A stretch of DNA of 64,000 bases. Source: Hemiscyllium ocellatum (taxonomy: Eukaryota). Within the stretch, counting starts at the first letter, position 1, and each line of letters opens with the position of its first letter. The stretch lies in NCBI RefSeq assembly GCF_020745735.1, contig NW_026867443.1, positions 186,001 to 250,000 on the forward strand, read 5' to 3'. The notes under the pieces were generated by a model. It saw only the letters and a program-made list of their open reading frames with translations, ran no database searches and was not told where the DNA came from. Made by a program: the position numbers and the translations under genes. Positions 8,644 to 58,970 of this stretch are shown piece after piece.

Positions 8644-8972
8644 CTACACACATTCTGATCTCCTGATGCTCTTGCTGAGGGGAGAGGGGAGGGTCACGTG
8701 GGTGAGGGCACAGGAGAAGCGAGCGTTGGACTCCCAGTCAGACCCAGAGAGGGTCAGCAGGCTGCTGACACTGTAGGTGCTGTCCGAAGCTCGCAGGTAG
8801 TTGCTGGTCTGAACCCCGTCCGAAATGACTGCACCGTCTTTCTTCCACTGCACCTCCAGCTCATCGGGATAGAAGTGATTGGCAAGGCACACCAGGGTGG
8901 CAGTGTCCTTGGCATTAATCTGCTCAGGGGAGGGGGGCAGCAGGGTCAGCTTGGGCTGAGAGTTGTCACGGA
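8644..8972 (-). CDS. IGKC: Ig kappa-type light-chain constant exon, cluster 1 (C1)
   Basis: Acceptor TTTTGTCTTTCAG, then a 329-nt open exon: (I)RDNSQPKLTLLPPSPEQINAKDTATLVCLANHFYPDELEVQWKKDGAVISDGVQTSNYLRASDSTYSVSSLLTLSGSDWESNARFSCALTHVTLPSPLSKSIRRSECV*. It has the C1-set Cys/Trp/Cys and the terminal ECV. Confidence 0.97.
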
Positions 8973-20232: not shown

Positions 20233-20889
20233 TGCACTGCCTGAGAGTGTGGTGGAGGCAGCTTCAATTGAAACATTCCGAAGGGAATGAGACTGTTATC
20301 TGAAAAGGAACAATGTGCAGGGTGACAGGGAGAAGGCAGGAGAATGACACTCAGTCAATTGCTCATTCGGAGAACTAGTCCAGACAGGATGGACGGAATG
20401 GCCTTCTTGTGCGCTGTAACAATTCTGTGATTGTGTGATTGAGCAGAGCTAAAGCTGGGGGAGGTGGGAGCTTGGTGTCTCACTGTGCTGCTGCTGCTGC
20501 TGCTGCTGCTGCTGAGGTCAGTGAGATCAGAGGCTGGGACAGGGAGCCAGAGCATACATCAAACTCTGCCCCGTGTCCGTCACACTGAGACTGGCAGGAG
20601 GCTACTCACTGATTTCACTCCATGCTGCAGGAATGGGACCACAGGCTGCAAATGGACAGAGCTCCTCCACACGGTGAGTAAAACTTACTGACTTATATCT
20701 TGCTTTTTTTAAAGCGGGCATGAAAGTAAAGAAATACAGCTGGACACCCTGTTAGACACAGTGCTCCTCAATCAACCATTTCATTCACTGCAGCTCCCCA
20801 CTAACACCTTCAACAAATCAGCAACTGTATTTTAGAAAGTGTGTTTCAGTATTGACAGGGTTAATAACAGAGGATTGAGGTTTACTTAC

Positions 20890-20924
20890 TCAGTCTGAGC
20901 TTGGTTCCTTTACCGAACGTAAGC
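20890..20924 (-). CDS. IGKJ: Ig kappa-type J segment, cluster 1 (J1), LTFGKGTKLRL
   Basis: G CTT ACG TTC GGT AAA GGA ACC AAG CTC AGA CTG A, with the FGxGT motif and a phase-1 GTAAGT donor at 20889-20884. Directly flanked by a 23-RSS. Confidence 0.97.
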
Positions 20925-20963
20925 CACAGTGAGAGCTCCCAGTGCAGAGGCTGTACAAAAACC
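20925..20963 (+). other. 23-bp-spacer recombination signal sequence of J1
   Basis: CACAGTG (20925-20931), 23-nt spacer, ACAAAAACC (20955-20963): perfect consensus. Confidence 0.98.
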
Positions 20964-21401
20964 TCAGCTCTCTGCTTTCCTCTTATCACTGTCAACCTCT
21001 CTCTGTCTCTGTCTGTCTCTCACTCACTCTCACCCTCTCCCTGTCCCTCTCTGTCTCTCCCTCATTCATGTGTCTTTCTCTCTCCGTCTCTCTGGGTTGT
21101 TTCCAGCTGGGCACAGGAGGTTTGTGAAATTTATTTTTCGATGTTAAATCTTGCAGCAGCTCTTCACATGTGGCCATGGAGTGTAAGAGGGAAACTAGAG
21201 GCCTTCAGTGAGCGTTGAAACACCACAGGGATTGGAGTGTGTCGTGGACAGTGGCAATCCCAGTTTGGGGTAATTTGATCAGTTTCATTTAGATCTAACT
21301 GTGGATATATCAGTTCAGGCAGTAAGACTGTGTGTCCATTATTATACATTTTATGTAACTGTGGGATGTGTCAGTACAGGAGGTAGTGCTTTATGTATTG
21401 A

Positions 21402-21429
21402 GGTTTTTGTACAGCTCTGTATCACTGTG
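21402..21429 (-). other. 12-bp-spacer recombination signal sequence of V1
   Basis: On the minus strand CACAGTG-ATACAGAGCTGT-ACAAAAACC: perfect consensus. V-12/J-23 is the kappa configuration. Confidence 0.98.
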
Positions 21430-21728
21430 TAGAGGGTAGCTGTAATCCTGCATACAGTAATAATCAGCGACATCCTCATTCTGAACGTTGCTGATTGTCA
21501 GGGTGTAACTGGTCCCTGATCCACTGCCGGTGAATCGCTCGGAGACTCCTGTGAATCGAGTTGTTGCATCATAGATCAGGAGCGAGGGGTTCTGACCTTC
21601 TCGCTGCTGGTACCAAGCAAGGTTGCTGCTAATGCTTTGACTGGCCGTACAGGTGAGTGTTGCAGTCTGGCCCAGTCCCACTGACAGCACCGGGGGAGAC
21701 TGGGTCATGGTGATGTCCCCACTGATAC
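21430..21728 (-). CDS. IGKV: Ig kappa-type V exon, cluster 1 (V1), unrearranged
   Basis: Acceptor CCCCTCAG, then the open frame (G)[99 protein letters not shown] ending at the heptamer. Confidence 0.97.
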
Positions 21729-21914: not shown

Positions 21915-21963
21915 CTGCGACACAGAATGCCAGGGGCCAGATCAGCTGGATGTGTGAAATCAT
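21915..21963 (-). CDS. Leader (signal peptide) exon of V1, MISHIQLIWPLAFCVA-G
   Basis: 49-nt exon with CACC-ATG start and a phase-1 GTACAA donor. 186-nt intron to the V exon. Confidence 0.93.
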
Positions 21964-22023: not shown

Positions 22024-22121
22024 TTTATAAAGCTGCAGCCTGTGAGAGTCTGACTGGGTGTTCCTCAGTATGTAAATGGCATCAGGCAGAGAGAGCCACA
22101 TCAGCCCCTCACACTTCCTCT
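22024..22121 (-). promoter_or_regulatory. V1 promoter: PU-box, octamer variant and TATA
   Basis: Minus strand: AGAGGAAGTG (22121-22112), ATTTACAT (22077-22070, one mismatch to ATTTGCAT), TTTATAAA (22031-22024). Confidence 0.75.
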
Positions 22122-26560: not shown

Positions 26561-27319
26561 GAAATTGCAGGAAAAGCTCAGCAGGTTTGGCAGCATCTTG
26601 GAGAGAAATCAGAATTAACATTTTGGGTTGAGCATGAAATATTAACTCTGATTTCTCTTCACAAATGCTGCCAGACCTGCTGAGCTTTTCCAGCACTTTC
26701 TATTTTTGTCTCGGATTTACAGCATCTGCAGTTCTTTTGTTTTCCCTCCAAAAGAACTTCCATTTAGAACAAGAGCAGCAGATACATGGGAACACTGTGA
26801 GCTGCAAGTTCCCCTCGAAAAAGCTTAGCATCCTGACTTGGAAATATGTCACTGATCCCTCAGCCTTGCTGGGTTAGAATGCTGGCATTGTGGGTCAACT
26901 TACAGCTTGTGGACGATAACAATTCAAGATGGCAGCTTCCCACCACCTACTCCAGGGTAACTAGGGACAGGGTAAAAAATGTTGACCCAGCCGGTGAAGC
27001 CCACTTCCCACAGGTGAATATGCAAAACCAAATGAAGTGTCCCTCAGGAGGGGAGAGGGAATGTTCAGGATCCTGAACTCCATTTCCCAGCCCAGGCAGT
27101 TTGTCTCCCAATGAATGAATGAGATACCAATTTGAAGCCCAGGTTCAGGGCAGTCTCACTCTGTGGACATGAGGTTTATGAGAGGGAATTGGAGATTGAG
27201 CTGTAAAGGAAAGATTTGCTGGGTTACGGGGAGAGAGGGGGGAAGCAGTGGGACTAACTGGGTCATTCAAAGGATTGATGGGCTGAATGGCCTCCTCCTG
27301 TACTGTCAGATTCCAGGGA

Positions 27320-27560
27320 GTGCAGATGGTTCACAGTTTTCTCCCGTCTCAGTAACAAACATCCAGCTGCTCCGAGCTCCTTCTTTCACTTCCCCTGTTG
27401 GTGAAGTTTCAACCTTGTGCTCTGACAGTCTTTGCAGTTATTTGTTGCACTGGGGCTTTCTGCTGTGGTCAGAATCTCTAATAATAAGTGTCCAATCAGT
27501 GACAATCACAGCAGCTAAGAGCAGTCAGGACTGGGGAGCCAGGCTCACTGGGAAACACAT
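27320..27560 (-). promoter_or_regulatory. Candidate upstream B-cell enhancer, cluster 1 copy (EICE, RUNX, E-box)
   Basis: GGAAGTGAAA (minus strand, 27393-27384), TGTGGT 27464-27469, CAGCTG 27364-27369. ~95% ungapped identity to 44161-44390. Confidence 0.5.
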
Positions 27561-28699
27561 TGGGAAGATCCAAGTCATCCTATTCAGCTCCCAGTACAAA
27601 CTCCATCCCTCTCCCTGAGCACTGTCTGCAGTTCAACCAAACTCTTAACAATTTTGCCCTCATCTTTGGGGCTGATTTGAGGCACAAATCCTCCACATAT
27701 CAACGACTGAAAATCTCAACCATGTTTTTGAGACCATTCCAATGTTATCCAGGCCCACATCACAGCTATTGACTTCCGTAAACATCAGCTCATCCCAAAC
27801 TCTGCTGTCTGTGTTCAAACTCACACCAAGTCCACCCCACACCCCTGCCCACACCTCCCCACCCCACCATGACCACCACAATCCTCACTGACTGACATCA
27901 GCTCCTGGTCCAGCAATACCTCGATTTTCAAATTCTCATCCCTGTTCTCAATCTGCTCCCTGTACTTCCACCAGCCCTATCTCTGTGACCTCCTCCAAGG
28001 TGCCTCACACAGTGTGATCGATAATCTTGGATGTATGTCTCTCTGTTTCTTCATCCAAGTCATTGAGAAATATTGTGAAAAGCTGAGGTTCCAGCACAGA
28101 TCCCTGAGAATAGCACTACTCACATCTGGCTCATTGGAACACATGCACATTATCCTTCCTCTCTGTCTCCTAGGCAGACCCATTCCTGACCCAAGGTAAA
28201 TGCATTTCTCAAATTCCATCCAATTCCATGATTTGGAGATGCCGGTGTTGGACTGCCGTGTAAATGTTAAAAATCACAGAACACCAGGTTCGAATGCAAC
28301 AGCTTTTTTTGGAAGCATCAGCGTTTAGAGTGCTGCTCCTTCATCAGATGGTTGTGGAGTGTAAGATCTGAATCAATGTTTCTTTTGTGGAACATTCTTA
28401 AATGTCTTTTGGAATTCCCTATAGACAATAGCCATCGACATTCCCTTATATCCCACATGAGTGAGCTCCTAACAAAGTCTAACCCAGTTAGTTAAAGATG
28501 TCTGAACCTTTGTCAATCCATGCTGTCTATCTCGGACCAGTTCATATTTGTCCGTTATTCTGTCCCTAAAAACAGACTCAATCACTTCCTGACAACAGAC
28601 ATTCAATGGAGATGTTCATTATAATTGAGGCTCGTAAACAGCTAGCATTGACATGAGGGGCTGAACAGCCTCCTCCTGTGCTGGCACCTTCTCTGTCTC

Positions 28700-43500: not shown

Positions 43501-44160
43501 TTCTCCCGTTCTCGCCAGTTAGGGAAAAATATTTATCTTTGGTCAGAAATTAGTTTGGAGGTAGGAGACAGAGAGGAGGGATAATGTGTGTGCTCTCCAA
43601 TGAGCAAAATGTGGATAGTGGTGACCCCAGGGAATTGGGCTGGAACCTCAGCACTTCACGATATTTCTAAATGACTTGGATGAAGGAATAGACAGCCATA
43701 TATCCAAGATTGTTGATCACACTGAGTGAGGCAGTTTTGAGGAGGTTACAGAGATAGGGAGAGTGGAGGACAGGGAGGGACTTGAGAACAAGGATGAGAA
43801 TTTAAAAATCGAGATGGTGCTGGACCAGGAGCCAATGTAGGTACAGGGTGCAGGGGGTTGGAGGAATGGGATTTGGTGCGAGTTTGGATATGGGCAGCAG
43901 AATTTGGGATGAGCTGAAGGTCATGGAGGGCAGTGGCGGTGATGTGTGCAAGCACAACATTGGCATGGTCATGTTTGGAATCCCATGGACATGACAGAGA
44001 TTTTCAGTGGCTGATCTTTGTGAGATGGAGGATATGGGGCTCAGATCAGCCCCAAAGATGAGACAAAGTTTGTAAAGAGTCTGGTTGAGCAGCAGATAGT
44101 GCTCAGGGAGAGGGATGGTGTTGATAACGGGATCTGAAGGGGATGGCTTTGACCTTCCCA

Positions 44161-44400
44161 ATGTGTTTCCCAGTGAGCCTGGCTCCTCAGTCCTGACTGC
44201 TCTTAGCTGCTGTGATTGTCACTGATCAGACACTTATTATTAGAGTTTCTGACCACAGCAGAAAGCCCCAGTGTAAAAAATAACTGCAAAGACTGTCAGA
44301 GCACAAGGTTGAAACTTCACCAAAAGAGGAAGTGAAAGAAGGAGCTCAGAGCAGCTGGACGTTTGTTACTGAGATGGGAGAAAACTGTGAACTGTCTTCG
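44161..44400 (+). promoter_or_regulatory. Candidate upstream B-cell enhancer, cluster 2 copy
   Basis: GAGGAAGTGAAA 44326-44337, ACCACA 44252-44257, CAGCTG 44352-44357. Confidence 0.5.
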
Positions 44401-46079
44401 CTGCCTGGAACCTGACAGCACAGGAGGCTGGTTCTGGGATTTATCTTTTCAGAAACAGCACAGTGATGGAAAAAAGGACAGTCACTCTCTCACAAACACA
44501 CACGCCTGCCCTCGGAGATGAGAAACAGAATCCAGCAGCAGCTCTGTCTCCAAGCTGTGAAACCTGCACAGAATTGTTCCCTCATTCAGTTTTTAACTGA
44601 CAGAATAGACCAAGCAGGGGAGGCAACACAGTGGTGTGTACCGTCAGAAGGGAGTTGCCCTGGGAGTCCTCACCATTAACTATGGAATCCATGAAGCCTC
44701 ATGACAGCAGGTCAAACATGGGGAAGGAAACCTCCTGCTGATTACCACATAGCACCGCCCTCCCCTCCAACCTCAACTGAGCAGTCAGTCCTCCTCCATG
44801 TTGAACAACACTTGGAGGGAGGACCGAGGGTGGGAATGATGCAGGATATACTCTGAGTAAGGGACTTCAAAGTCCACCATCAAGAGCTGCTCAGAAGCAT
44901 CACTACTGAGCAAACTGGTCAAGTTCCACCTGATTCACCTGCTAGACTGGACCTGGGGCAGGTGGTGAGGGAATCAACAAGAGGGAAAAACATACTCACT
45001 ATCACCCTCACCAATCTGCCTGCTGCTGGTGTATCTGTCCATGACAGTATCAGTAAGAGTGACCATCGCACAGACCGTGTGGAGACAAAATCCCATCTTC
45101 ACATTGAGATTACCTTGCATTTTGTTGGGCAAGAGATATGGGATGTCAGGAAGAACTTTTTTTAGCAGCAATTGGTAATGACTTGGAAATTAGTGCTCAT
45201 TCAGGTGAGGCAGGTGAAGACACTCAGTGATTGCAATGGCAGATTGGATGGGCTCTTGATGGAAATAAACCTGCAAGGCTCTGGGGGTCGAGTAGGGGAG
45301 GGGGTGGGACTGACTGGATTGCTCCATGAAATGACAGCATTTACACACTTAGTCTCACCTTTACACAATGACTGGGAGAAACAGACAAACCAGTTCACAG
45401 AAGTGTTTTCTCAAGCAAAACACTCTTGAACCAACTCAGAGAACACACCAGTCTAGATTTACCAGAATAAATCAGCAAATCAATGGCAAGGGAACAGCGA
45501 ACCAAAAGTGATGGAACTGAACAGTATATTCAATAGCACAAAAAACGAGAGAGGGAGGGATGAAGGGCAGGAAGTCAGAGAGTACACTCTCGGGGTCTGA
45601 AGGCTCTGCTGTCAATGGTGGGATGGAGGAAGCAGCAATGGGTAGGAGACCAGAGACAGAAGGTGGAATGGGGAGGGAGGGAATGTGAGTCTACAGCAGG
45701 ACACAGAGTGAGGGAGGAGGGAGGCCATGGAGGCAATTGGCTGGCAGTGAGTTCGGGGTCATTCTTGAATGACGTCAGATGTCAGACAAGGAAGGGACCC
45801 TCCATATCAGACAAGTTGGGGTTTATGGAATGTGGCTTCAGGAAGCTGGGAGAGGACATTGAAATCATAGAGTCAGGAGGTAGGATGAGCAGGAATTTGG
45901 GTTTCTGTGGTCAAGAGGCTGAGGTAGTGCAGAGACAAACAATGTTGTGCAAATTGAAATAAAAGACCTACGTAATGGACAGGATGTGGGGTTACAGCTC
46001 AGGTACTGGACAGTGCGGTGGGAAGGAGGCCCATGTTTACTGTTTATTGGTCCTATGGGATGGTGCCCCATGTTTACAT

Positions 46080-47310
46080 CATCATAGAGTCATAGAGGTT
46101 TACAGCGTGGCATCAGGCCCTTCAGCTCTACTCATCCATGCCGACCAAGTTTCCAAACATGAACTAGTCCCATCTGCATCCGTTTGGCCCAATCCTCTCT
46201 AAATCCTTCCTATCCATGTTCCTGTACAATTGTCCTTGAAATCTAGTAATTGTACTCCCCTCTACCATTTCCTGTGGCAGCTTATTACACATACACACCA
46301 ACCTCTGTGTGAAAAGGTTGTCTCTCAGGCCCCTTCTAATTCTTTCCCCTCTCAACTTAAATCTATTCCTTCTCATACTGGACTCTCCTACCCTGGGGGA
46401 AAAAAAAACTTTCGCTATTCACCTTATTTATGGCCCTAATGATTCTATAAACCTGTCTAAGATCAGCCCTTAATCTCCTGCATTCACTGTAAAAATCTCT
46501 CGGCCTATCCATCCTCGCCTTATAATTCAAACTCACCAACCTTGGTAACATCCCTGTTCATCTTTCTTTTATCCAAACCAGTGTAATAACTTCCTTCCTA
46601 TAGCAGGGTGAGCAGGAATGTACACAGTGTCCAAATGTGGCCTTCCCAATGCCTTGTACAGCTGTAACATGATGTCCCAGCTCCTGTACTCCCTGCTTTG
46701 ACCAGTGAAGGTGAGCGTGCCAAATACCTTCTTCACCACCCTGTCTACCTGTGACACCACTTCCAAGGAACTATGCACCTGTACCCCTCAGTCTCTCTGT
46801 TCAACAACACTCCCCATGGCTCTACCATTAATTGTGTAATTCCTGCCCTGGTTGATCTTACCAAAATGCAACTCCTTGCATTTATCGAAATTAAGCTCCA
46901 TCTGGATTTGTTGCCCCACTGGCCCAGTTGATGAAGATGACATTGCATTCTTAGATAACCTTCTTCCCTGTCCATGATGCCAACAATTTTAATGTCAGCC
47001 ACAAACTCACTGACCATTCCTTCTATTTTCTCAAACAAATTGTTCATATAAAATGATGAACAACAGTGGATCCAGGATCGATTCTTGTGGCAGACGGCTG
47101 GTCACTGGTCTCCAGTCTGAAGAACAACCCTCTCTCACCAGCCTCTGCCTCCTTCCATCAGGCCCATTTTATATCCAATTGGTTAGCTCTGCCTGGATCC
47201 TCTGTGACTAAGCAGTCTACAATGGGGAACCTTGTCTAAGGCCTTGCTAAAGTCCATGTCGACGATATGTACTGATCTATCTTAAGCTATCTATTTCTTC
47301 AAAAACTCCA
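46080..47310 (-). mobile_element. CR1 LINE RT fragment inserted into a minisatellite
   Basis: Minus-strand RT motifs (SEFVADIKIVG; VVKKVFGTLTF; DNLFTQRLV). Minisatellite units lie on both sides. Confidence 0.75.
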
Positions 47311-47344
47311 CTATCCACTTGTCTCCATTAGAAGGACAAGTGAA

Positions 47345-47600
47345 TAGGTGGCCCACATTTACTGGTCTTCTTGGAGTATCCAGTCAGAAGGAGGTCCATG
47401 TTTACTGGTCTCCTTTGGAGAGTCCATTAGAAAGGAAGCCAACATTTCCTGGTCTTTATTGGAGGCTCAAGCAGGAACAATGCCCATGTTTACTGGTCTC
47501 TATTGGGAGCTTCAGTGGGAAGGAGGCCCATGTCTCTCCATGGGGCACTCTCGTGAACTGACGTCCATGTTGACTGGAATCTGTTGGAGAGTCCAGTGCA
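47345..47600 (+). repeat. Degenerate ~43-bp minisatellite, about 6 units
   Basis: The CCATGTTTACTGGTCTC...GGAAGGAGG unit recurs at ~47356, 47397, 47443, 47485, 47529 and 47566, with further units at 46015-46080. Confidence 0.7.
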
Positions 47601-48049
47601 TCGTGGACACCATGGTGGGTGTGGGGTTCAGTTCCTTTCTGTTGTAAATGTGTGATGGTCCAAGCGTCATCCCAGTAAAACACCCTGACTCAGAGACTGA
47701 TCGCGGAAGGGGAAGGAGAGGGGAAAGGATTGGAACATGTTGTGAATGGACAGGATGGGTCAGTGGGTCAGAGCCTGTCCTGTCCCTCCAGCTCACACTG
47801 ATGGCCTGAGGATCTCCTCTCTCTGCTGGACCTTCATGGAATGAGGTTTGTGTCCAAACCAGTCCCCAGTGAGAATAGGCCAACAGCACAGAACTGCCCT
47901 TCATTTAACAAGAATCTGTCCATCTTCCTGAGAGATACCAAAACCTGGTCAATGTGGAAATGGGCCTTTACTCCAGGAGAAGACATGCTTCTGGGGTCAA
48001 GGGTTAACATCCATTTGTGGGGCGGAGCAGAGAGAGATTTATCCTGAAT

Positions 48050-48420
48050 TCAACTGTCTCCACCTGGGACACTGTGAGAAAGAGAGAGAAGCGAGACAGA
48101 GAAAGAGAAATAGAGGTCAAGTGGGCTGCGGTGAAGGAGGGAGAGACAGAGGGAGAAATAGAGAGGGGTAGATAACATTTGGAGGCTTTCAATTGAAGTG
48201 AGAGATGGAGCGAGTGACGCAGGCAGTGAGAGATGGAGAAAGATTATGATACAGAGTGAGGAAGCGTGAGTGAGTTGGAGAGAGTGGCTATGAGACAGAG
48301 TGAGAGAGAGGGAATATGAGAGAGATTAACAGTGGGAGAAAGAGATAGATGCAGAGAGATCAAAGTAGCAGATGTGAGACAGAAAGGGGAAAAGAGAGAG
48401 AGAGAGAGAGAGAGGTCCTG
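48050..48420 (+). repeat. (AG)n-rich polypurine tract
   Basis: Inverted homologue of 23200-23920. Confidence 0.85.
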
Positions 48421-49400
48421 GTCACCACATTCTGGGAAAGATGTGATTGTACTTGAGAAGGGGCAGAGGAGATTTCCCAGGATTCTGCCTGGGATGGAGA
48501 GTCAGCTATGAGGAAAGATTGGAAAGGTTGGGGCAGTTTTCCTTGGAGCATTGAAGGTTGAGAGGGACCTGATAGAGAGGTATAAGATAATTGTTGGCAG
48601 TGATATGTTGCATAGGAAGGCACTTTATACAAGAGTAAAGGACTCAATAACCAGGGACAGAGATTGAAGGTAACACAGACATGGACACATAGAAACTTGG
48701 AGCATGAGCAGGCCATTCGGCCCTTTGAGTCTTGTGTGTCATTCAGTATGATCATGGCTGATCCTCTCTCTCAATGCTGTGTTGCTGCTTTCTCCCTATT
48801 TCCTTCATGCTGTTAAAATGCAAAACAACTCTTTTCTTTTTCTTGAATATATTCAGTTCCTTGTCCTCCACAGCCGTTTGTGGTAGAGAATTCATCAGGT
48901 TGACCATCCTCTGAGTGAAGAAATGTTTCCTCATCTCAGTCCTAAATGGTCTACCCTGTATCTCCCTGAGACTGTGTCCCCTGGTTCCAGACTTCCCAAC
49001 CAGGGGAACCTCCTCCCTGCCTGGGCATGTTAGAATTTTATACATTTCAATCAGATCCCCTCTCATCCTTCTAAACTCGAGTGAATCCAGGCCCAGTTGA
49101 GTTGCAGAGTGAGAGGAGAATTGAGGAGAAATGTTTTCAACCAGAGGGTGGGGGGAGTCTGGAACTCACTGCCTGAAAGGCTGGTTGAATCACAAACTCT
49201 TGTGACATTGGAGCAGTGTTTAGATATTCCCTTGTGTTGCTGTAACCTCCAGGGTAATGGGCCAAGAGCTGGAGGATGGGATTAGTGTCATCAGATCTTT
49301 GTTTACTAGCACAAACACAATGGGCCAAATGGCCTCATTCAGTGCTGTTCACATCAATCACTCTCTGAGACAAAAAGAGTGAGATAGAGAGAGAGAGAGA

Positions 49401-49498
49401 AGAGGAAGTGTGAGGGGCTGACGTGGCTCTCTCTGCCTGATGCCATTTACATACTGAGGAACACCCAGTCAGACTCTCACAGGCTGCAGCTTTATAAA
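49401..49498 (+). promoter_or_regulatory. V2 promoter: PU-box, octamer variant and TATA
   Basis: AGAGGAAGTG 49401-49410, ATTTACAT 49445-49452, TTTATAAA 49491-49498. Confidence 0.75.
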
Positions 49499-49558
49499 GC
49501 AGAGCCCAGTGAAGGGAGAGTTTATCAGGAAGCAGGCTCAGGGACAGGAGCACACACC

Positions 49559-49607
49559 ATGATTTCACACATCCAGCTGATCTGGCCCCTGGCATTCTGT
49601 GTCACAG
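49559..49607 (+). CDS. Leader exon of V2, MISHIQLIWPLAFCVT-G
   Basis: 49-nt exon with a GTACAA donor at 49608 and a 186-nt intron. Confidence 0.93.
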
Positions 49608-49793
49608 GTACAAATCTCTCTCCTTCCACCTTGAATCTTTAGCTGCTCTCCATTTCACTCCAATTCCACTGACTTGTGACTGAAGGGAAAATGCTGAAAC
49701 CAGAGGAAAGCTCAGTGTCTTCAACAATCTCTCATTTGACAGGCTCTTTCTGTGACAGTTCTGACTTCACTGTGTTTCTCTCTGACCCCTCAG

Positions 49794-50090
49794 GTATCAG
49801 TGGGGACATCACCATGACCCAGTCTCCCCCGGTGCTGTCAGTGGGACTGGGCCAGACCGCAACACTCACCTGTACGGCCAGTCAATATGTTAGCAATGAG
49901 CTTTCCTGGTACCAGCAGCGAGAAGGTCAGAAACCCTCTCTCCTGATCTATGCTGCAACAAATCGATTCACAGGAGTCTCCGAGCGATTCACCGACAGTG
50001 GATTAGGGACCAGTTTCACCCTGACAATCAGCAACGTTCAGAATGAGGATGTCGCTGACTATTACTGTATGCAGGATTACAGCTGGCCTT
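49794..50090 (+). CDS. IGKV: Ig kappa-type V exon, cluster 2 (V2), open but without a cognate J
   Basis: (G)[98 protein letters not shown]. Conserved Cys/Trp/Cys present. Confidence 0.95.
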
Positions 50091-50118
50091 CACCGTGATA
50101 CAGAGCCATACAAAAACC
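50091..50118 (+). other. 12-bp-spacer RSS of V2 with variant heptamer
   Basis: CACCGTG-ATACAGAGCCAT-ACAAAAACC: heptamer position 4 A>C, perfect nonamer. Confidence 0.93.
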
Positions 50119-50398
50119 TCAAAGCACACAGAATCACCTCCTGTACTGACACATCCACGGTTATATAAAATGCATAATAATGGACACACAGTCCCACTGC
50201 CTGAACTGTCATATCCCACAGTTAGATCTAAATGAAACTGCACAAATTACCCCATGCTGGGATTGTCACTGTCCGATACACTCCAGTCCCTGTGGTGTCT
50301 CAACGCTCACTAAAGGCCTCAAGTTTCCCTCTTCCACTCCATGGCCACATGTGAAGAGCAGCTGCAAGATTTAACAATGAAAAATAAAGTTCACAAAC

Positions 50399-50410
50399 TA
50401 GAGGCAGAGA
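50399..50410 (+). pseudogene. Deletion scar where J and its 23-RSS are missing in cluster 2
   Basis: Homology to cluster 1 stops at ...TCACAAAC (50398 = 21120) and resumes at TTGTTGAAGG (50411 = 20816). The ~303 nt containing J1 and its RSS are replaced by TAGAGGCAGAGA. Confidence 0.9.
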
Positions 50411-51399
50411 TTGTTGAAGGTGTTAGTGGGGAGCTGCAGTGAATGAAATGGTTGATTGAGGAGCACTGTGTCTAACAGGGTGTCCAGCTGTATCTCTTTA
50501 GTTCCATTGCCACCTTTAAGCAGCAACATAAAAGTCAGTAAGTTTTACTCTCCGTGTGGAGGAGCTCTGTCCATTTGCAGCCTGTGGTCCCATTCCTACA
50601 GCATGGAGTGAAATCAGTGAGTAGCCTCCTGCCAGTCTCAGTGTGACGGACACGGGGCAGAGTTTGATGTGAGCTCTGGCTCCCTGTCCCAGTATCTGAT
50701 CTCACTGACCTCAGCAGCAGCAGCAGTAGCACAGTGAGACACCGAGCTCCCACCTCCCCCAGCTTTAACTCTGCTCAATCACACAATCACAGAGTTGTTA
50801 CAGTGCACACGGAGGTCATTCCGCCCATCCTGTCTGGACCCGCTCTCTGAATGAGCAATTGACTGAGTGTCATTCTCCTGCCTTCTCCCTGTCGCCCTGC
50901 ACATTGTTCCTTTTCAAATAACATTCTCATTCCCTTCAGAATGTTTCAATTGAAGCTGCCTCCACCACACTCTCAGGCAGTGCATTCCACACCTTAACCA
51001 CCTACTGGCTGAAAATATTTTTCCCTCATCTCACTTTTGCTTCTTTTACCAATTATTTTCAATCCATGGCCTCTCCCTCTCAATTCTTTCTCAGGTGGGA
51101 ACATTTTCTCCTAGTTTACTCTGTTCAACCCCCTCCTGATTTTGAATTTCTCGTTCAAATCTCCTCTCTGCCTTCTTTTCTCTGAGGAAAAAAATTCCCA
51201 ACTTCTTCAGTCTACCTTCATAACTAACATCCCTCATCCTCGATGGGTCAGATAGCCCACTCGTGCTCCTATTTCTAATGTTCTTATTACCTTATCTTCC
51301 TATGTGAGAGACACACATCAGAATTCCACTTAACACTCTGTGGCTGTTCCTTCCCAGTCTTATTCCCAACACTCCGTGCAGACCCATCCTTACACAGTG

Positions 51400-54300
51400 A
51401 CCCTGATTTAGAATTTATTACTCTCTCTCCCTCACTCTGAAACTGGGTAAGAAGTTCTATTCCTTATTCTGGTGCTATCTATCTCTCCCAGGATTCTGTG
51501 CACCTCTGTGTTCCTCTCTGGTATTACCTCCTGGATCCCACAGGCCAAGATAGTTTAAACCCTCTCCAACAGCACGAGTAAATCACCCCAAAGGAGCTCA
51601 GTCCCAGGTCTGTTCAGGAGCAACCCGTCTGGTCTGTACGTGTCCATCTCCCCTCAAAGCCAGTCCCAATGTTAAAATAATCGAAAGACCTTCCTCCTGG
51701 ACTGTCTTTTCAGTTCCACAGTCACCTGTGCTATCCTCCTCTTTCTATTCTCAGTTGCGTGGGGCACTGGGGGTAATCTTGGAGATTCCTACTTTTGACC
51801 TCCTGCTGCTAATTCCCTCTGGAACTCCCTAAATTCTGACTGCAGGACTACATCCCTTTTCTCCCTCTGTCACTGGGACCGAAATGGACCACCACTGCTG
51901 CCTGTTCCCCCTCTCCCCTCAGGGTGTTCTGCAGCTGCTCAGTGACAGGCTTGACCCTGGCACCAGGGAGACAACACACCATCCTGGATTCCCATCTGCA
52001 GCTGCAGAAACATCTATCGATGTCCTCACTCTCGAATCTCCTCTATCACTCTTCCAGTCTTCCTTGTGCCCCACTGTACAGCTGAGCCCCCCCATGGTGC
52101 CAGGGACTTGGCTCTGGCTGCACTCCCCAGATGAACCATCATTCTCATCAGGGTTCCAAACTGAATCCTGGTTGGAGAGTGGGATGCACTCACGGGATTC
52201 CTGTACTAGCTGCCTGGTACTTTTGGACTGTCTGCTGCTCCCCCATTCCCTCTCTCCCTGCATACTCTGAAACTGCAGAGTGACCACATCTAGAAACGTG
52301 CTCTCCATGGAGCTCTCAGCCTCACGGACGCTCCGCACTGACACCAGCTGCTGCTCAAGCTCCGGAACCCGGAGTTCCAACTACAGTCACTGACCACACT
52401 TCCTGTGCTCATGGTATTCCAGGAAGCAGGACAAGCAGTTCCCTCATGCAACCTGATGCTCACTCTCACCACTCCCTGATTATCTTTTGTCAAAGTACTT
52501 TTGAGAAACAGCAACAGCAGGGCTCACAAACCAGGACTTTCAATGTCCATACAATCATAGAATTCCTACAGTATGGAAACAGGCCATTTGGTCCAACAAG
52601 TCCACACTAACACTCCGAACAGTAACCCACCCAGACCCATTCCCCTACCTTTTTAACCTACATTTACTCCTGACTAATGTACCTAACCTGCACTATGGGC
52701 AATTTAGCATGGCCAATTCATCGAACCTGCACAGTTTGGACCGTGGGAGGAAACCAGAGCACCCGGAGGAAACCCACGCAGGCACAGGGAGAACATGCAA
52801 ACTCCACACAGACAGTCACCCAAGGCTAGAATCAAACCTGGGTCCATAGCGCTGTGAGGCAGCAGGGCAAACCACTAAATGACCGTACTTCCAGTTTTCC
52901 AGGGATTCAAGGAACATCTACATAAACCCAAAATACTTAAGATATAGGAGCAGAATTGGGCCAGTCAGAAGAGAGTCTGCTCTGCCATTTGATCTTGTGT
53001 GATGTGTTTCTGTACCCCATTCTCCTTTTAACTTTTGATCTCCTTACTGATCAAGAACCTATCTGTCTCTGTTTTAAATACTCTCAACATCTTGGCATCC
53101 ATAGACCTCTGTGACAATGAATTCCGCAGATTCACCACCATGTGGCTGAAGAAATGCCTCCTTATCTCAGTTCTGACGGATCATTCTTCACTCTGAGGCT
53201 TTGCCTTCGGGCCCGAGTTTCTTCTATTCGTAGAAACACCTTCTCCATGTTCTCCAGGCCTCTCAATATTCTGTAGTTTCATTAAGATTCCCCCATCATC
53301 TTTCTGAACACAATTGTATACAGATCCAGAATCCTCAACCACTCTTTATATTACACCCCCTTTATTCCCAAGATCATTCTTATTCTTTCTCTCTTTTTCC
53401 TCTGGACCCTCTCCAATGACAGCACATCCTTCCTTAATAAGGAGACCAAATTCCAAATGCGGTCTGATCAGAGACTTATACAAACTCAGCAGTACACCTC
53501 TGACGTTAAAGTTAATGCTAACATTGTAATTGCCTTTCAAACAGCCAATGGTGAACCTGCACGTTAACCTTCAGAGAAACCTGAGCAAGGACTCCCAATT
53601 CTCTTTGTGCTTCAGATTTCTGAAATCTTTCCTCACTTAGAAAACAGTCTGTGCCCCTATTCTTCCCACCAAAGTATCTAGCCTCCCAAGTTCCCGCATT
53701 GTACTCCACCTGCCACTTCTTTGCACATTCTCCCAGCCTGACCAAGTCCTTCTGCAATCTCCCCCATTTCCTCAACTCAACTTGACTTTTCACCAATTTT
53801 TGCATCATCTACAAACTTATCAACAAAACTTGGTGAATGATAGGGCCTTAAGGAATATAGTGGAACAGAGGGAGCTTAGAATTCAGGTAAGCAGTTCTCT
53901 GAAGATGGAGTCACAGGTAGATAGAGCAGAGAGCTTTTTCTGCAGTACCCTTCATCAGTCAGGGCATTAACTACAGACGTTGGGAAGTTATGTTGCAGTT
54001 ATACAGGACATTGGTGAAGCCACACTTGGAATATTGTGTTCAGTTTTGGTCACCTTGTTACAGGAAGGATGTTATTAAACTGGAAAGAGTGCAGAGGAAA
54101 TTTGCAAGGTTGTTGCCAGGATTCAATGGTTTCGGTTAAAGGGAGAGTACTTTTTTCTTTAGAGTGTAGGAGACTGAGGGAGGACCTCAAAAGATCATGA
54201 CAGGCATGGATAGGGTGACTTCACTCACTCTTTTCCCCAAGGTTTGCGAATATGAGCTAGAGCGCATCAGTTTAAGGTTAGAGGGGAAAGAATAAACGGG

Positions 54301-55800
54301 AACCTGAGGGGCAACCTTTTTATACATAGGATTGTTCGTATATGGAATGAGCTGCCAGTGCAAGTGGTTGAGGTGGGTACATTAATAACATTTAAAAGGC
54401 ATTTGGACAAATACAGCAAAGGACAGGATTCAGAATGATATGGGCCAAGTGCAGGATTAGTGTAAATGGACATTTTGGTTGGCATGGGCCAGTTTGGTCC
54501 AAATGGCCTGTCTCCATGCTGTAGGACTCTGTGACATTGTTATGGACCAGGCCAGACCCTTCAAAACATTTTAAGAATGCAGCCCAGACCTTACCTTTTC
54601 GAATTGTGTTAAGCAAATGTAACCTGGATATTCGAAGATTGATACAACTGGTCAAACCACTCAGCTTGAAGGAAAAGAGAATTTATTTACACACAATCAA
54701 AAGAAAGCAGAATTTAGAATAACTTAACTGTTTGAAAACCCAACTGACAAGAAAATGCAACTTGACAAAGAGCTGTTCCAATTTGCTACAGTAGCCTTGG
54801 TAAAAAGGTAAATATAAACACAGAGGTTCTTACAGGAGAGGAGTTTCAGACAGTGAGTCCACTGGAAAATGTTGAATTGGGGAACCTTTCTCACCAGCAG
54901 CTTTCTTTATCCAGGAGCTTCCAACCGACTGTTCGTCAAAAACAGCAAACTGGAAGAACTGGCCACTCTCCTTTTATTGGACAAGGATTTAATATAAAAC
55001 CTCAAAGTTAATTGCATTACCAGTACATCTGACTCCAGATTCCCTGTCACAAACTGCAGGGTGAATTCTGTCATATTACGGTCAATGCCCCCAAGGGATT
55101 CCTTCACCCCAAGTTCCCTAATCAGGTCTGCTTCAATACACATCACCCAATCCAGAATTGCCTGTTCCATAGTGATCTCTACCACAAGCTGCTCCAAAAA
55201 TCACCTCGTAGACATTTCATTAATTCCTTTCCTTGAGATCCCCAAACAATTTAATTTTCCAGTCTCCCTGCATATTTAAGTCCCTCATGACCATTGTAGC
55301 AGGGCCTTCTCTATCACTTGATTTAGTTTCTTCCTCATATCCTGACTGCTGCTGGGGGGTCCTGTGCTAAGTTCTCATCATGCTCTTTCTCCCTTACAAC
55401 TCCTCACCTCTACCCACACAGATTAAATGCATTCCAACTCTAAATCCCTTCTTGTGATTGATCTCATTTCATTTCTTACCAAGAAGGTAACCCCACCCCC
55501 ATCTGCCCATCAGCATGTCCTGTCAATCGGATGTGCATCCTTGAGTATTTCATTCCCAGCCCTCAACCCCTTACGGCCAGATCTCTGTGATACTCAAAAC
55601 ATCATACCTGTCAATTCCAATCAGCGCTACAAGCTCATTTACCTCATTTCGGATACTCCCTGCATTCAGGTACGACACCCTCAGTCCTGCATTGACTGCC
55701 CTCCTTTTCATAGTTGTCCCCTTATGCACAGTGCCTAAAATTAATTTTCCGATCCTTTCCATAATCTATGTCCGATTAATTATTCTGGAAACTTTACTAA
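51400..55800. mobile_element. CR1 ORF1 remnant (-), HE1-type SINE (-, ~52555-52890) and further CR1 fragments in the V-C interval of cluster 2
   Basis: ELRVPELEQQLVSVRSVREAESSMESTFLDVVT (51919-52380, -), V-SINE core, and RT and endonuclease fragments (LRVSYLNAGSIRNEV...YDVLSITEIW). Confidence 0.75.
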
Positions 55801-57314
55801 CCTCTCCTGAGCCCTGCGTCACTTTAATGATTTTAAAGTCCTTGGGAACTCAAATTATCTCAATTTATGACATCACACTGTCTACCTTATTCCGAATGCT
55901 GCATGCATCATCATACAAAGACTTTTTAAGTTATTTCTATTGTCAAGTTTCCCTGCACTTCTGTATTGCCTTGTTACAATATGACATTCACAAATTCTGA
56001 CCCTTCCTCTTATTTTCTGGTAACAATCAAACCCATCACTAACCACGACTCCCACCTTCTGTACCTTTCATTTTCTCACGTTTTGTGCAACTGAACCAAT
56101 ATGCTTTCTCTTTGGGTTGGCTTCAGGTCAATATTTATCCCTGAAACATCACTGAACATGCTTCATAATCTCATTTACGATTGCGCGATATTGCTGTGTA
56201 CAAATTGTGTTTTCTGCATTACAACAGTGACCAGTATTCAGACAAGTCCCTCACTCTCTGTAAATGCTTTGGGAGAGCCTGACATACAAGTCTCTCTTTT
56301 GATGCACTGGGAGCCTTTCAGATATCAGAGATGCCATTCCATGGCTCTATTAGACAGACGGCAGGACGGTGTCTCCTGGTGTCCTGGTCAATATTGATTC
56401 CCTAATTAGCATCACTAAAAATCTGATCCTCGCCTGATTGTCACCCAGCTCTCTGGGATCTTGCTGAGCACAGTCTGATGGAAAGAGCCACTGCGACATC
56501 CTGAGGTGGAGGCAGGTGCAACATAAATGCAAGTCTTTCTTTGAGGTTGGAGTCTCCTGAACCTGACCCTTGCCCATTGGATGCACGCTTCCATCTTCCA
56601 GGGAATATGGGATCATTAAGAGCAGTGTCACTGTCTGATCCCAAGACACTGAGACTCTTTGCAGCCTCACCTTTGACCTTAACCCAGCGCTGAGCTGGGA
56701 GATTTGAAACAAAATCTAGAATGTTCTACATGGACACCCAACGTGACTCCTTCCTGAAGTGTGCTGATCCAACTCTGCTCCAATGTTGTTGGATAAACTT
56801 ATCCCGAGCTGTGAGTGATCGGAGGTTTGTTAAAGAGGTGTCGAACTCCACCCCACATACCAGCTCTTGCTCCATTGCTCTGGAGGCTTTGGTGTTTCAA
56901 GTGAATATCCAAGTGTTTTTTCAATGTGATGAGGGTTTCTGCCGCTCTCACCCTTTCAGCTAGTGAGGTCCTGATACCACCAACCACTGGGTGAAAACAA
57001 TTACTCTTCAACTCCCCTCTAACCCTGCCCCCAATTCATTTCAATCTCTCTCCATGGTTATTGCCCTCTCTGCCAATGGAAATCAGTCCTTCCTACCCAC
57101 TCTATCCAGACCTCTCATCATTTTACACACCATTGATCAAATCTCCCCTCAGCCTCCTGTGGTCCAAAGAAACCAGTCCCAGCCAAACCAATCATTCCTC
57201 AAAGCTAATACTCCTCATTTCTGACAAAATCCTCCACTGTCCCCATCTCTAGGGGGACCAGAACTGCACACAGTTCTCTCACAGTGCTCTAACTGGGCTT
57301 TATTTGAGGTCAGA

Positions 57315-57530
57315 AGTCACACAACACCAGGTTATAGTCCAACAGGTTTATTTCAAATCACAAGATTTGAGAGCACTGTTCCTTCAGCACTGAAGTCGCT
57401 TCACCTGAAGATGGAGCAGCATTTCAAAGCTTGTGATTTTAAATAAACCTGCTGAAGTGTAACATGGTGTCATGTGACTCCTGAACATGTCCACCCCTGT
57501 CGGACACCAGAGCCTCCACATCATATCGAT
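57315..57530 (+). mobile_element. Hairpin Penelope-type element, decayed, with hammerhead-like core
   Basis: Inverted arms and CTGAAGA at 57405-57411. Same family as 19341-19547. Confidence 0.6.
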
Positions 57531-58107
57531 AGTTTCACATCTTTGCTGAGACTCTCTCTTTGGGAGTGTCACTCTTACTCTTTTGGGAAAAGATTCTGAA
57601 TGATCTCTGTCTCTGTCTCATCCTTGGAGGCCTCCCACTGCCCTGTCACTGATCTCCCATCAAGTCGATGGTTCCAGTACTCTTTTATTAAATTACCACA
57701 CAGTTTGGTAAAATGAGTTGTTCCCAAATAAAAACTTTTACACTTGCTCCATGGTTCTCCATTTCCATCCCTATTCTCAATCTCACTGCGTTCCGATCAC
57801 TGTCACTAAATGCTCCCACATTGATAGCCCTTCCAGTTGCCCACATTCATTCCTTAAATGGTGGTCCAGGACTGTCCCTTCTCTTTCTGCTGCGTCACCA
57901 TCACCTTCTCAGAGACAGTTAGGGATGGGCAGCAACTGGCTCTGCCAGTGTTGTACACGTCCCAAAAAGCAATTTTTAAAATGCCAGTGCTTTTGTCAGG
58001 TCTGCTAGGTACTGGATACAAATGTTCAAATGTTTTACCAGTTAATGTTCAGAGAGTTTATGTACCTTCAAAAGGCAGGGATTAAAATTGTTTCTCTTGT
58101 CTTTCAG

Positions 58108-58436
58108 GCCGTGACAACTCTCAGCCCAAGCTGACCCTGCTGCCCCCCTCCCCAGAGCAGGTCAATGCCAAGGGCACTGCCACCCTGGTGTGCCTTGCCA
58201 ATCACTTCTATCCCGATGAGCTGGAGGTGCAGTGGAAGAAGGACGGTGCAGTCATTTCGGACGGGGATCAGACCAGCAACTACCTGCGAGCTTCGGACAG
58301 CACCTACAGTGTCAGCAGCCTGCTGACCCTCTCTGGGTCTGACTGGGAGTCCAATGCTCACTTCTCCTGTGCCCTCACCCACGTGACCCTCCCCTCTCCC
58401 CTCAGCAAGAGCATCAGGAGATCAGAATGTGTGTAG
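58108..58436 (+). CDS. IGKC: Ig kappa-type constant exon, cluster 2 (C2), open
   Basis: Acceptor CTTGTCTTTCAG, then 329 nt: (S)RDNSQPKLTLLPPSPEQVNAKGTATLVCLANHFYPDELEVQWKKDGAVISDGDQTSNYLRASDSTYSVSSLLTLSGSDWESNAHFSCALTHVTLPSPLSKSIRRSECV*. Confidence 0.96.
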
Positions 58437-58964
58437 AGTGTGAGAGACAGTCCACAGAGGAGACACAACTTTAAACAGGACAGGGCTGAGCTGGCAGGTC
58501 AAAGGTCATTGTCAGCACTGAATTTCAACTCTCTTCCTTCACAGGACTGGCTCAGAGACACTTCTGAGCTTCAGGGGTTAAGGCAGGTCATTGGGATAGT
58601 GTAGAGAAAAACTTTACTCTTTATCTAGCCCCATGCATTCCCTGACCTGGATGTGTTTGATGGGGACAGTGTTAACTTGCGATGTCAAGTATAACCTCTA
58701 GAAGATCCTAAAGACTGTCAGCTGTGCAAAAACAATGTGAACCTCAAAAGTCTCTGCTTCAGTAAAACAGACCTCCTTTCTGCTCAGCCGCCAGTTCCAA
58801 TTTAAGGTTTTGTCACTGTTTAAAGGGACAGGATTCTCATGTTATTGAGAAAATCTCCACAAGTGTTTTCCTCAAGCTCCATTGTGGCTGTGAATTTGTG
58901 CAGCTTCCTCTGTCTGGGCTGTTAATTGCTGACTGTTTTCTGTCAATGTCAATCTGGAAAAGGG

Positions 58965-58970
58965 AATAAA
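58965..58970 (+). terminator. Polyadenylation signal candidate, cluster 2
   Basis: AATAAA ~528 nt after the stop, homologous to 8113-8118. Confidence 0.4.

What the first reader, a model, noticed from the sequence alone, without database searches (positions are those of the whole stretch)
50119..50460. Germline deletion of the only J segment creates a V-C (J-less) kappa cluster
Seen: the V-J spacer aligns with cluster 1 up to 50398 and the J-C intron aligns from 50411. The ~303 nt that hold the (AG)-rich run, 23-RSS, J and its splice donor are replaced by ~10-12 nt (TAGAGGCAGAGA, resembling TAAGAGGAAAGCAGAGA just 5' of the J nonamer). I found no GGTTTTTGT-23-CACTGTG or FGxGT between 50119 and 58107. 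The breakpoints are not at a heptamer, so this is not a RAG coding or signal joint, unlike the known germline-joined shark genes. Inference: a distinct cluster state, neither split nor pre-joined, whose V, promoter and enhancer candidates remain well preserved.
Basis: seen in the sequence. Interest (0 to 1): 0.85.

Follow-up and report, generated by a model that had tools for sequence, protein, structure and literature searches.

The report
Shark kappa cluster that lost J
One of two neighbouring shark antibody light-chain mini-genes has lost its joining (J) segment through a single clean 230-base germline deletion, so it can no longer assemble a light chain by itself; this looks like ordinary decay of one copy in a large gene family, not a new kind of antibody gene.

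Summary
The window holds two head-to-head Ig kappa (type III/NS4-like) clusters. Cluster 1 (minus strand) has V, 12-RSS, a perfect 23-RSS, J and C. Cluster 2 (plus strand) has an intact promoter, leader, V, 12-RSS and C, but no RSS-23, J or J splice donor. There is no J anywhere else in the window.

Five bamboo-shark (Chiloscyllium punctatum) kappa contigs, fetched as outgroups, change the anatomy. The closest one, L001, is 93% identical to cluster 2 over 2.7 kb and groups with it (support 95/94). So the 12 nt are ancestral sequence. The cluster-2-specific event is one 230-nt deletion with 2-nt microhomology (AT) and no heptamer at either end. It arose after the split from the bamboo-shark lineage.

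All six other clusters examined keep J. On its own branch V2 shows 6 replacement and 0 silent changes, two of them in the conserved FR3 GSGSG motif, plus a heptamer change. C2 is kept similar to C1 by homogenisation (dS 0.05 against about 20% intron divergence).

The best reading is a recently disabled cluster in a birth-and-death family. Inversional use of V2 with J1, 29 kb away, is geometrically possible but untested. A first-reader note (s1-213640, unchecked) reports another J-less kappa cluster elsewhere in this genome.

The parts
49445..49452 (+). Octamer-like promoter motif ATTTACAT of V2, about 40 nt upstream of a TATA-like TTTATAAAG. The identical motif is at 22070-22077 (-) for V1.
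   Evidence: the promoter block 49200-49558 is 97-99% identical between the clusters
49559..49607 (+). Leader exon of cluster 2 (MISHIQLIWPLAFCVT, phase 1), donor GT at 49608
   Evidence: the nurse-shark NS4 leader primer NSL matches at 49561
49608..49793 (+). Leader intron, 186 nt, the same length as reported for nurse-shark NS4 genes
   Evidence: PMC2193156
49794..50090 (+). V2 exon. The V-set ORF is intact, with Cys23, Trp and YYC. It carries private replacements, including G->D and S->L in the FR3 GSGSG motif.
   Evidence: Pfam V-set E=5e-16; alignments; 89% identical to C. punctatum P0005
50091..50118 (+). V2 12-RSS: heptamer CACCGTG (position 4 off consensus), 12-nt spacer, nonamer ACAAAAACC
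   Evidence: five of seven clusters compared have CACAGTG
50119..50411 (+). Retained part of the V-J intervening sequence. Its last 12-13 nt (50399-50411, TAGAGGCAGAGAT) are the start of the purine-rich run, shared with bamboo-shark L001.
50410..50412 (+). Deletion junction. The 2-nt microhomology AT makes the exact break ambiguous. Relative to L001, 230 nt are missing: about 86 nt of purine-rich run, the 39-nt 23-RSS, the 35-nt J, and the donor plus about 70 nt of intron.
   Evidence: L001 with 2684-2913 removed reproduces the cluster 2 junction
50412..58107 (+). Remainder of the J-C intron of cluster 2. The first ~580 nt are 92-97% identical to cluster 1. It contains no RSS-23 and no J.
58108..58436 (+). 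C2 exon (C1-set, 108 codons in frame 58110-58433, stop at 58434-58436), with an intact AG acceptor at 58106-58107
58965..58970 (+). AATAAA poly(A) signal downstream of C2. Its counterpart in cluster 1 is at 8118.
20817..21119 (-). Cluster 1 segment with no counterpart in cluster 2: purine-rich run, 23-RSS, J, donor and 73 nt of intron
20925..20963 (-). Cluster 1 23-RSS, a perfect GGTTTTTGT-23-CACTGTG with a SacI site in the spacer, as in nurse-shark NS4
   Evidence: PMC2193156
20890..20924 (-). J1, the only J in the window (LTFGKGTKLRL, donor GTAAGT at 20889-20884)
   Evidence: primer JL5 matches
21402..21728 (-). V1 exon (21728-21430) and its consensus 12-RSS (21429-21402)
8644..8972 (-). C1 exon. 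In the 324-nt reading frame it differs from C2 at 8 nt (4 silent, 4 replacement).

Best explanation
Cluster 2 is a kappa (type III/NS4-type) light-chain minicluster disabled by one germline deletion of about 230 nt. The deletion was probably made by end joining or replication slippage across 2 nt of microhomology, starting inside a purine-rich low-complexity run. It removed the 23-RSS, the single J, its splice donor and about 70 nt of intron. V2 now has no 23-RSS partner in cis and no exon that can splice to C2, so the cluster cannot make a light chain by itself. It is a structurally null copy in a birth-and-death, gene-converting multigene family. The following are shown: the deletion, its derived polarity, its clean junction, the absence of any other J, and the intact V and C ORFs. 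The following are inferred: that it is non-functional, that V and C look healthy because the event is recent and because gene conversion homogenises them, and the repair mechanism.
For: Anatomy and absence of J. Polarity: all five C. punctatum clusters fetched, plus cluster 1, have RSS-23 and J with almost invariant sequence. L001 is 93.3% identical to cluster 2 over 2709 nt, against 78-90% to cluster 1. L001 is sister to cluster 2 in an ML tree, with support 95/94. Removing L001:2684-2913 reproduces the cluster 2 junction, with AT microhomology and no CAC/GTG at the breaks. No rescue by splicing: the only GT at the V end (CC|GTGATA) gives phase 2 against the phase-1 C acceptor and reaches a stop after 2 codons (read directly). 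Relaxation: on the cluster 2 branch V2 has 6 replacement and 0 silent changes, including G->D at a Gly invariant in 8 relatives. The other two branches show 12:10 (Fisher one-sided p=0.049). There is also a private heptamer change and a 2-nt loss at the V end. Homogenisation: C exon dS is 0.053 against about 20-28% divergence in the flanking intron. The promoter-leader-intron block is 97-99% identical, and cluster 1 has almost no private changes there. Context: pseudogene and variant NS4 clusters are known (PMC2193156; PMC5192425).
Against: V2, C2, their splice sites, the promoter and the poly(A) signal carry no disabling lesion. C2 has no more replacements than C1 (2 against 2, polarised by outgroup proteins). 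V2's substitution rate on its own branch (2.0%) equals the noncoding rate (2.3%), but the same holds for the presumably functional V1, so rate alone does not show decay. The N:S contrast rests on 6 changes. No reads, second haplotype or expression data could be examined.
Confidence: 0.78

Rival explanations
1. The cluster is J-less but V2 is still used. V2's 12-RSS pairs with the 23-RSS of J1 in the head-to-head neighbour, 29 kb away. Joining by inversion gives V2-J1-C1, so cluster 1 effectively has two V segments and only C2 is orphaned.
For: The geometry is right. In + coordinates both V2 (RSS at 50091-50118) and J1 (RSS at 20925-20963) have the coding segment on the left and the RSS on the right. 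That is the inversional configuration, and it obeys the 12/23 rule. V2's ORF, nonamer, spacer length and promoter are intact. Inter-cluster inversional joining over up to 81 kb is documented in zebrafish IgL (PMC3014032).
Against: Published shark data indicate rearrangement within clusters only (PMC5192425; PMC3014032 discussion). V2's private changes are all replacements, with two in the conserved FR3 motif, and its heptamer has left consensus. Its nearest bamboo-shark relative is also drifting at both heptamers. There is no expression evidence.
Confidence: 0.1
2. The J loss is an assembly artefact, or a rare or heterozygous allele of the sequenced animal. The species' normal cluster 2 then carries a J.
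For: The missing stretch begins in a purine-rich low-complexity run, a sequence type that long-read platforms cover poorly (my own knowledge, not tested). Only one assembly was available. An N run lies in the paralogous intron at 18326-18458.
Against: The junction is clean. Two-thirds of the missing DNA is unique sequence (RSS, J, intron). The flanks differ from cluster 1 by about 8-10%, so a collapse between paralogs would not give this sequence. The retained AGAGGCAGAGAT matches the orthologous bamboo-shark sequence.
Confidence: 0.07
3. The outcome is the same (a dead cluster), but the initiating lesion was a RAG cut at the J heptamer border in germ cells, repaired after resection in both directions. 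This would be a failed germline rearrangement, related to the events that made germline-joined shark genes.
For: Germline RAG activity is inferred for NS4 genes (PMC2193156). In L001 coordinates the heptamer/J border (2808/2809) lies near the middle of the deleted 2684-2913, with 125 nt to the left and 105 nt to the right. V2 also shows a private 2-nt loss exactly at its coding/heptamer border, as an open-and-shut joint could leave.
Against: A border this close to the centre is expected by chance about 9% of the time for any deletion that contains it. No breakpoint is at a heptamer. Coupled cleavage would normally give a VJ joint. The purine-rich run alone is a sufficient cause of fragility.
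Confidence: 0.1

Closest known systems
Split (unrearranged) shark type III / NS4 kappa V-J-C minicluster (Lee et al. 2000, PMC2193156)
   Same: The window has a leader, a 186-nt leader intron, a V with a 12-RSS, one C exon and an octamer-like promoter. [quoted passage not shown] The published primers NSL, NS4A and JL5 match the window exactly. The V-J intervening sequence of cluster 1 is about 505 nt, against 502-524 nt published.
   Different: Cluster 2 lacks the 23-RSS, the J and the J donor. Its PstI fragment would be 950 bp instead of about 1250, and its EcoRI fragment is 2433 bp.
Germline-joined (VJ) shark and skate light-chain genes
   Same: Both are heritable departures from the split configuration within the same gene family, and both leave the promoter and C intact.
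   Different: Joined genes lose both RSSs and the whole intervening sequence, keep J fused in frame to V, and have junctions at RSS borders, which is a RAG signature. Here the V RSS and 290 nt of spacer stay, J is gone and the breaks are not at heptamers.
Pseudogene clusters and orphan segments in Ig multigene families (birth-and-death evolution), such as NS4 R6/R19 and the nurse-shark sigma-2 pseudogene locus (PMC2193156, PMC5192425)
   Same: One copy among many is disabled by a private lesion while its paralogs stay functional. Gene conversion keeps the exons looking similar.
   Different: The lesion is loss of a whole segment rather than a stop or frameshift, so V2 and C2 would each score as intact ORFs. 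I found no paper describing a J-deleted shark cluster, but the searchable library lacks most J Immunol papers.
Inter-cluster inversional IgL rearrangement in zebrafish (Zimmerman et al. 2008, PMC3014032)
   Same: Neighbouring clusters lie in opposite orientation with compatible RSSs, within tens of kb.
   Different: It is demonstrated by cDNA in zebrafish. Here it is only a geometric possibility, and shark data so far argue against inter-cluster joining.

Membership tests
Shark Ig kappa (type III/NS4) light-chain cluster | Kappa-type V-set exon with leader, split by a short leader intron | tested here: met
   Pfam V-set E=5e-16. 89% identity to C. punctatum kappa-like V. NSL and NS4A primers match and the leader intron is 186 nt.
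Shark Ig kappa (type III/NS4) light-chain cluster | Single C1-set constant exon with a C-terminal Cys (…RSECV) | tested here: met
   Pfam C1-set E=8e-22. 96% identical to C1 and 78-86% to other shark kappa C regions.
Shark Ig kappa (type III/NS4) light-chain cluster | V followed by a 12-RSS | tested here: met
   CACCGTG-12-ACAAAAACC at 50091-50118. Heptamer position 4 is off consensus.
Shark Ig kappa (type III/NS4) light-chain cluster | One J with a 23-RSS and a splice donor between V and C | tested here: not met
   No RSS-23, FGxG or J homology in 50119-58107 or elsewhere, apart from cluster 1.
Germline-joined VJ light-chain gene | V and J fused in one exon, with both RSSs and the intervening sequence absent | tested here: not met
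   The V RSS and 290 nt of spacer are retained, and J is absent.
RAG-made deletion (coding or signal joint) | Breakpoints at heptamer/coding borders | tested here: not met
   The breaks lie in GCAGAGAT|AGAAAG and GCTGAAT|TGTTG (L001 reference), with no CAC/GTG.
Classical Ig pseudogene (stop, frameshift or splice defect in V or C) | Disabling lesion inside a coding exon or splice site | tested here: not met
   The leader, V and C ORFs, the donors and acceptors and the poly(A) signal are intact. The defect is loss of a segment.
V segment used by inter-cluster inversional joining | Transcripts or coding joints linking V2 to J1-C1 | not testable with these tools
   Only the RSS geometry and the 12/23 compatibility could be checked.

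The most novel reading that the evidence does not exclude
The J-less cluster is not dead. V2 is kept as a second, inverted V for the neighbouring cluster and joins J1 by a 29-kb inversion. This would be the first inter-cluster V-J joining in a cartilaginous fish, and a living intermediate between the minicluster and multi-V (translocon-like) light-chain organisations.
Probability: 0.1. Interest if true: 0.65.

Novelty: new member of a known kind. Interest (0 to 1): 0.3.

Why it matters
Shark light-chain genes are the textbook minicluster system, and their genomic census is still incomplete. This case shows, with an outgroup-dated junction, one way such clusters die: the 74 nt of RSS plus J go with their flanks in a single small deletion that starts in the unstable purine-rich spacer, while V and C stay intact and are kept similar to their paralogs by gene conversion. 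Two practical consequences follow. Counts of 'functional' clusters based on intact V and C ORFs, or on gene models, will be too high; a catshark model was seen splicing V straight to C across a J. PCR screens that use leader and J primers cannot see such copies. The case would matter more only if V2 proves to be used with the neighbour's J.

Tried and rejected
1. A J hidden elsewhere. RSS scans allowing up to 4 mismatches in all (at most 3 in the nonamer, 2 in the heptamer), [FW]GxG scans in six frames, word-7 blastn with RSS+J and tblastn with the J peptide found only J1. The WGTG at 51760 is intron sequence shared with cluster 1 and has no RSS or donor.

2. Direct V-to-C splicing. The heptamer GT gives the wrong phase and an early stop. 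A weak in-frame donor inside the Cys codon (T|GTATGC) exists in both clusters, but it would remove CDR3 and the G strand, so it was rejected as a functional product.

3. The 12 nt as untemplated or templated filler. This was rejected because L001 has the same bases in place. Before the outgroup was available, the match to the purine run was not distinctive: 104 of 2000 shuffles scored as well.

4. Rate-based tests of decay. The V exon and noncoding rates are equal on all three branches, so the test is uninformative. C1 and C2 have equal numbers of lineage-specific replacements.

5. Fetching the Scyliorhinus torazame contig failed because the file is too large.

6. Pfam scan of the ten longest other ORFs in the window gave no hits.

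7. Literature searches for J-less or incomplete shark clusters found nothing relevant.

8. The scan's own index, searched by sequence, gave nothing.

Full report
**Layout of the window.** Self-comparison shows an inverted duplication. Cluster 1 lies on the minus strand, from about 28200 down to 8073. Cluster 2 lies on the plus strand, from about 43530 to 59012. The two are head to head.

Cluster 1 has:
- a leader (ATG at 21963) and V exon 21728-21430;
- a consensus 12-RSS at 21429-21402;
- a perfect 23-RSS at 20963-20925;
- J at 20924-20890 (LTFGKGTKLRL, donor GTAAGT);
- C exon 8972-8644.

Cluster 2 has:
- leader 49559-49607, a 186-nt leader intron and V exon 49794-50090;
- a 12-RSS at 50091-50118 (CACCGTG-12-ACAAAAACC);
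- C exon 58108-58436.

Pfam calls the V exon V-set and both C exons C1-set. tblastn finds exactly two V, two C and one J in the 64 kb.

**Check of the observation.** 48747-50398 aligns to 22790-21120, and 50411-50987 aligns to 20816-20230, both at about 92%. Between them, 303 nt of cluster 1 face 12 nt of cluster 2. Those 303 nt hold a purine-rich run (82% purine over 110 nt; TRF finds imperfect 6-, 10- and 38-nt periods), the 23-RSS, J, the donor and 73 nt of intron. No other RSS-23 or J-like coding sequence exists between V2 and C2 or anywhere else in the window.

**Origin of the window.** The V2 protein search gave its best hits in the brownbanded bamboo shark Chiloscyllium punctatum (89% and 86%), then the cloudy catshark (72%). 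The window also matches every landmark published for nurse-shark NS4 genes (PMC2193156):
- primers NSL, NS4A and JL5 match exactly;
- the leader intron is 186 nt;
- cluster 1's V-J intervening sequence is about 505 nt, against 502-524 published;
- there are PstI sites between octamer and leader and after J;
- there is a SacI site in the J RSS.

The source is therefore an orectolobiform shark. I did not determine which one.

**Outgroups change the anatomy.** Five C. punctatum contigs could be fetched (L001-L005). All five have a J with a 23-RSS downstream of V, and the RSS-23/J block is almost invariant across the family.

L001 is 93.3% identical to cluster 2 in one 2709-nt alignment (window 47710-50411). 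It is only 78-90% identical to cluster 1. In an ML tree of the promoter-to-spacer block, cluster 2 and L001 are sisters (ultrafast bootstrap 95, SH-aLRT 94), and cluster 1 is the next branch out. So in this block the cluster 1/cluster 2 split is older than the split between this species and the bamboo shark. L001 is the nearest available relative of cluster 2, probably its orthologue.

In the four-way alignment, cluster 2 and L001 share a 54-nt gap relative to cluster 1 and L002. Both then read AGAGGCAGAGAT.

Deleting L001:2684-2913 (230 nt) reproduces the cluster 2 junction over 61 nt, apart from a handful of substitutions. The left flank and the end of the deleted segment both end in AT, which is 2 nt of microhomology. 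Neither break is near a CAC/GTG. The deleted 230 nt are about 86 nt of purine-rich run, the 39-nt RSS, the 35-nt J, and the donor plus about 70 nt of intron.

V-J intervening length varies from 406 to 679 nt among the clusters, so this spacer is generally unstable. The '303 nt replaced by 12' is thus older spacer length variation plus one clean, private deletion.

**Can the cluster still work?** By itself, no. V2 has no 23-RSS partner in cis, and no exon can donate a splice to C2. The only GT at the V end lies in the heptamer (CC|GTGATA). It leaves 2 nt against a C exon that needs 1, which gives a stop after two codons (read). An in-frame weak donor inside the Cys codon exists in both clusters, but it would delete CDR3 and the last V strand.

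V2 could, in principle, join J1. In + coordinates both have the coding segment on the left and the RSS on the right, the spacers are 12 and 23, and the two are 29 kb apart. An inversion would therefore create V2-J1-C1 on the minus strand. Such inter-cluster inversions are proven in zebrafish (PMC3014032). The shark literature, however, reports rearrangement only within clusters (PMC5192425). I could not test expression.

**Signs of constraint or decay.** The exons are intact. The promoter keeps the same variant octamer (ATTTACAT) and TATA as V1, and a poly(A) signal follows C2. This preservation is weak evidence of function, for three reasons.

- C1 and C2 differ at 4 silent and 4 replacement sites, giving dS 0.053 and dN/dS 0.31. 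The flanking intron is 20-28% diverged, and the first ~130 nt of 3'UTR are also 96-99% identical. That pattern indicates homogenisation by gene conversion rather than selection on each copy.
- In the promoter-leader-intron block, cluster 1 has 0.3-0.5% private changes against 8.6-8.8% in the neighbouring upstream sequence and spacer. This is another conversion tract.
- Changes can be assigned to branches using cluster 1 and L001. On this basis V2 has 6 private substitutions in its exon, all of them replacements. They include G->D at a Gly that is invariant in eight relatives and S->L in the same FR3 GSGSG motif. The other two branches show 12 replacement and 10 silent changes (Fisher one-sided p=0.049).

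V2 also has a private heptamer change (A->C at position 4) and a 2-nt loss at its coding end. Five of the seven clusters keep CACAGTG. L001, the nearest relative, has its own drift: V heptamer CACAATG, J heptamer CAAAGTG and donor GTAAGG. So this cluster lineage may have been under weak constraint even before the deletion.

C2 shows no excess of replacements. Polarised by outgroup proteins, there are two on each lineage. Rates of change do not discriminate, because V exons evolve as fast as noncoding DNA on all three branches.

**Mechanism and verdict.** The best-supported reading (about 0.78) is an ordinary germline deletion by end joining or slippage. It started in an unstable purine-rich run and removed the small RSS-J target. 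It disabled one cluster recently, after the split from the bamboo-shark lineage and within a branch of about 2% noncoding change. The cluster belongs to a large family evolving by duplication, conversion and loss.

The rivals are:
- continued use of V2 by inversion to J1 (about 0.1);
- an assembly or allele artefact (about 0.07), which the clean junction, the unique flanking sequence and the agreement of the retained bases with L001 argue against;
- a RAG-initiated break at the J border with resection in both directions (about 0.1). The border lies 125 and 105 nt from the two ends, which is suggestive but expected by chance about 9% of the time.

**Comparison with what is known.** The gene is a member of the shark kappa/NS4 family by its V, C, V-RSS and promoter, but it fails the defining one-J requirement. 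It is not a germline-joined gene, because the V RSS and spacer are retained and J is absent. It is not a RAG joint. It is also not a classical pseudogene in the sense of a broken ORF.

Pseudogene NS4 and sigma-2 clusters are known. I found no paper that describes a J-deleted shark cluster, but the searchable library misses much of the relevant literature.

The published leader-to-J PCR step could not have amplified such a copy. In that study all 90 V-positive phages examined gave a leader-J product, which argues that J-less copies are rare in the nurse shark.

Earlier notes of this scan list many kappa clusters in this genome. These include a second 'J-less' one (s1-213640), an RSS shortened by 11 nt (s1-191582, followed up as a decayed copy) and an orphan C with a 308-nt deletion (s1-219789). 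These notes fit the birth-and-death picture, but I did not verify them.

**Scores.** The finding is real and is now well characterised, but it is an ordinary kind of event: a new member of a known kind. Interest is 0.3. It would rise to about 0.65 only if V2 is shown to rearrange to the neighbour's J.

Noticed in passing
window 44074-44422 (+) and 27299-27646 (-); L003:3268-3615: An element of about 350 nt lies 5 kb upstream of each V. It is 92-93% identical to a bamboo-shark kappa contig, while the sequence around it is about 80% identical.
   Followed up: partly
window 49200-49793 vs 22300-21729 (-): The promoter-leader-leader intron block is 97-99% identical between the clusters. Cluster 1 has only 0.3-0.5% private changes there, against 8.6-8.8% in the flanking upstream sequence and spacer. 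This looks like a gene-conversion tract, so different parts of the clusters have different histories.
   Followed up: partly
window 58050-58560 vs 9030-8520 (-): The C exon and the first ~130 nt of 3'UTR are 96-99% identical inside introns and flanks that are 72-88% identical. Silent-site divergence is only 0.053. The C regions are being homogenised.
   Followed up: partly
L001:2360-2366 and L001:2802-2808 (C. punctatum BEZZ01019071.1): The nearest bamboo-shark relative of cluster 2 has a J heptamer CAAAGTG (critical third base changed), a V heptamer CACAATG and a J donor GTAAGG. The four other bamboo-shark clusters and cluster 1 have CACTGTG and CACAGTG, and cluster 1 and three of the four bamboo-shark clusters have GTAAGT. 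This cluster lineage may be decaying in both species.
   Followed up: partly
proteins P0001, P0002, P0015: Shark kappa light-chain fragments (VJ-C, 75-83% identical to this window) are deposited as proteins of Aeromonas veronii and Salmonella enterica. They are evidently shark cDNA or DNA contamination in bacterial assemblies.
   Followed up: no
protein P0004 (Scyliorhinus torazame scyTo_0021752): This gene model splices V (…YYCQQS) directly to C (RENSQP…) and skips J. Automatic models of unrearranged Ig clusters therefore look 'J-less' whatever the DNA holds, and cannot be used for a census.
   Followed up: no
window 18326-18458: A run of 133 N lies inside the J-C intron of cluster 1.
   Followed up: no
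window 49962-49967: V2 carries a ClaI site (ATCGAT) in CDR2 and V1 does not. In the nurse-shark paper this site marks the S1/S31/R4/R7 group of NS4 genes.
   Followed up: no
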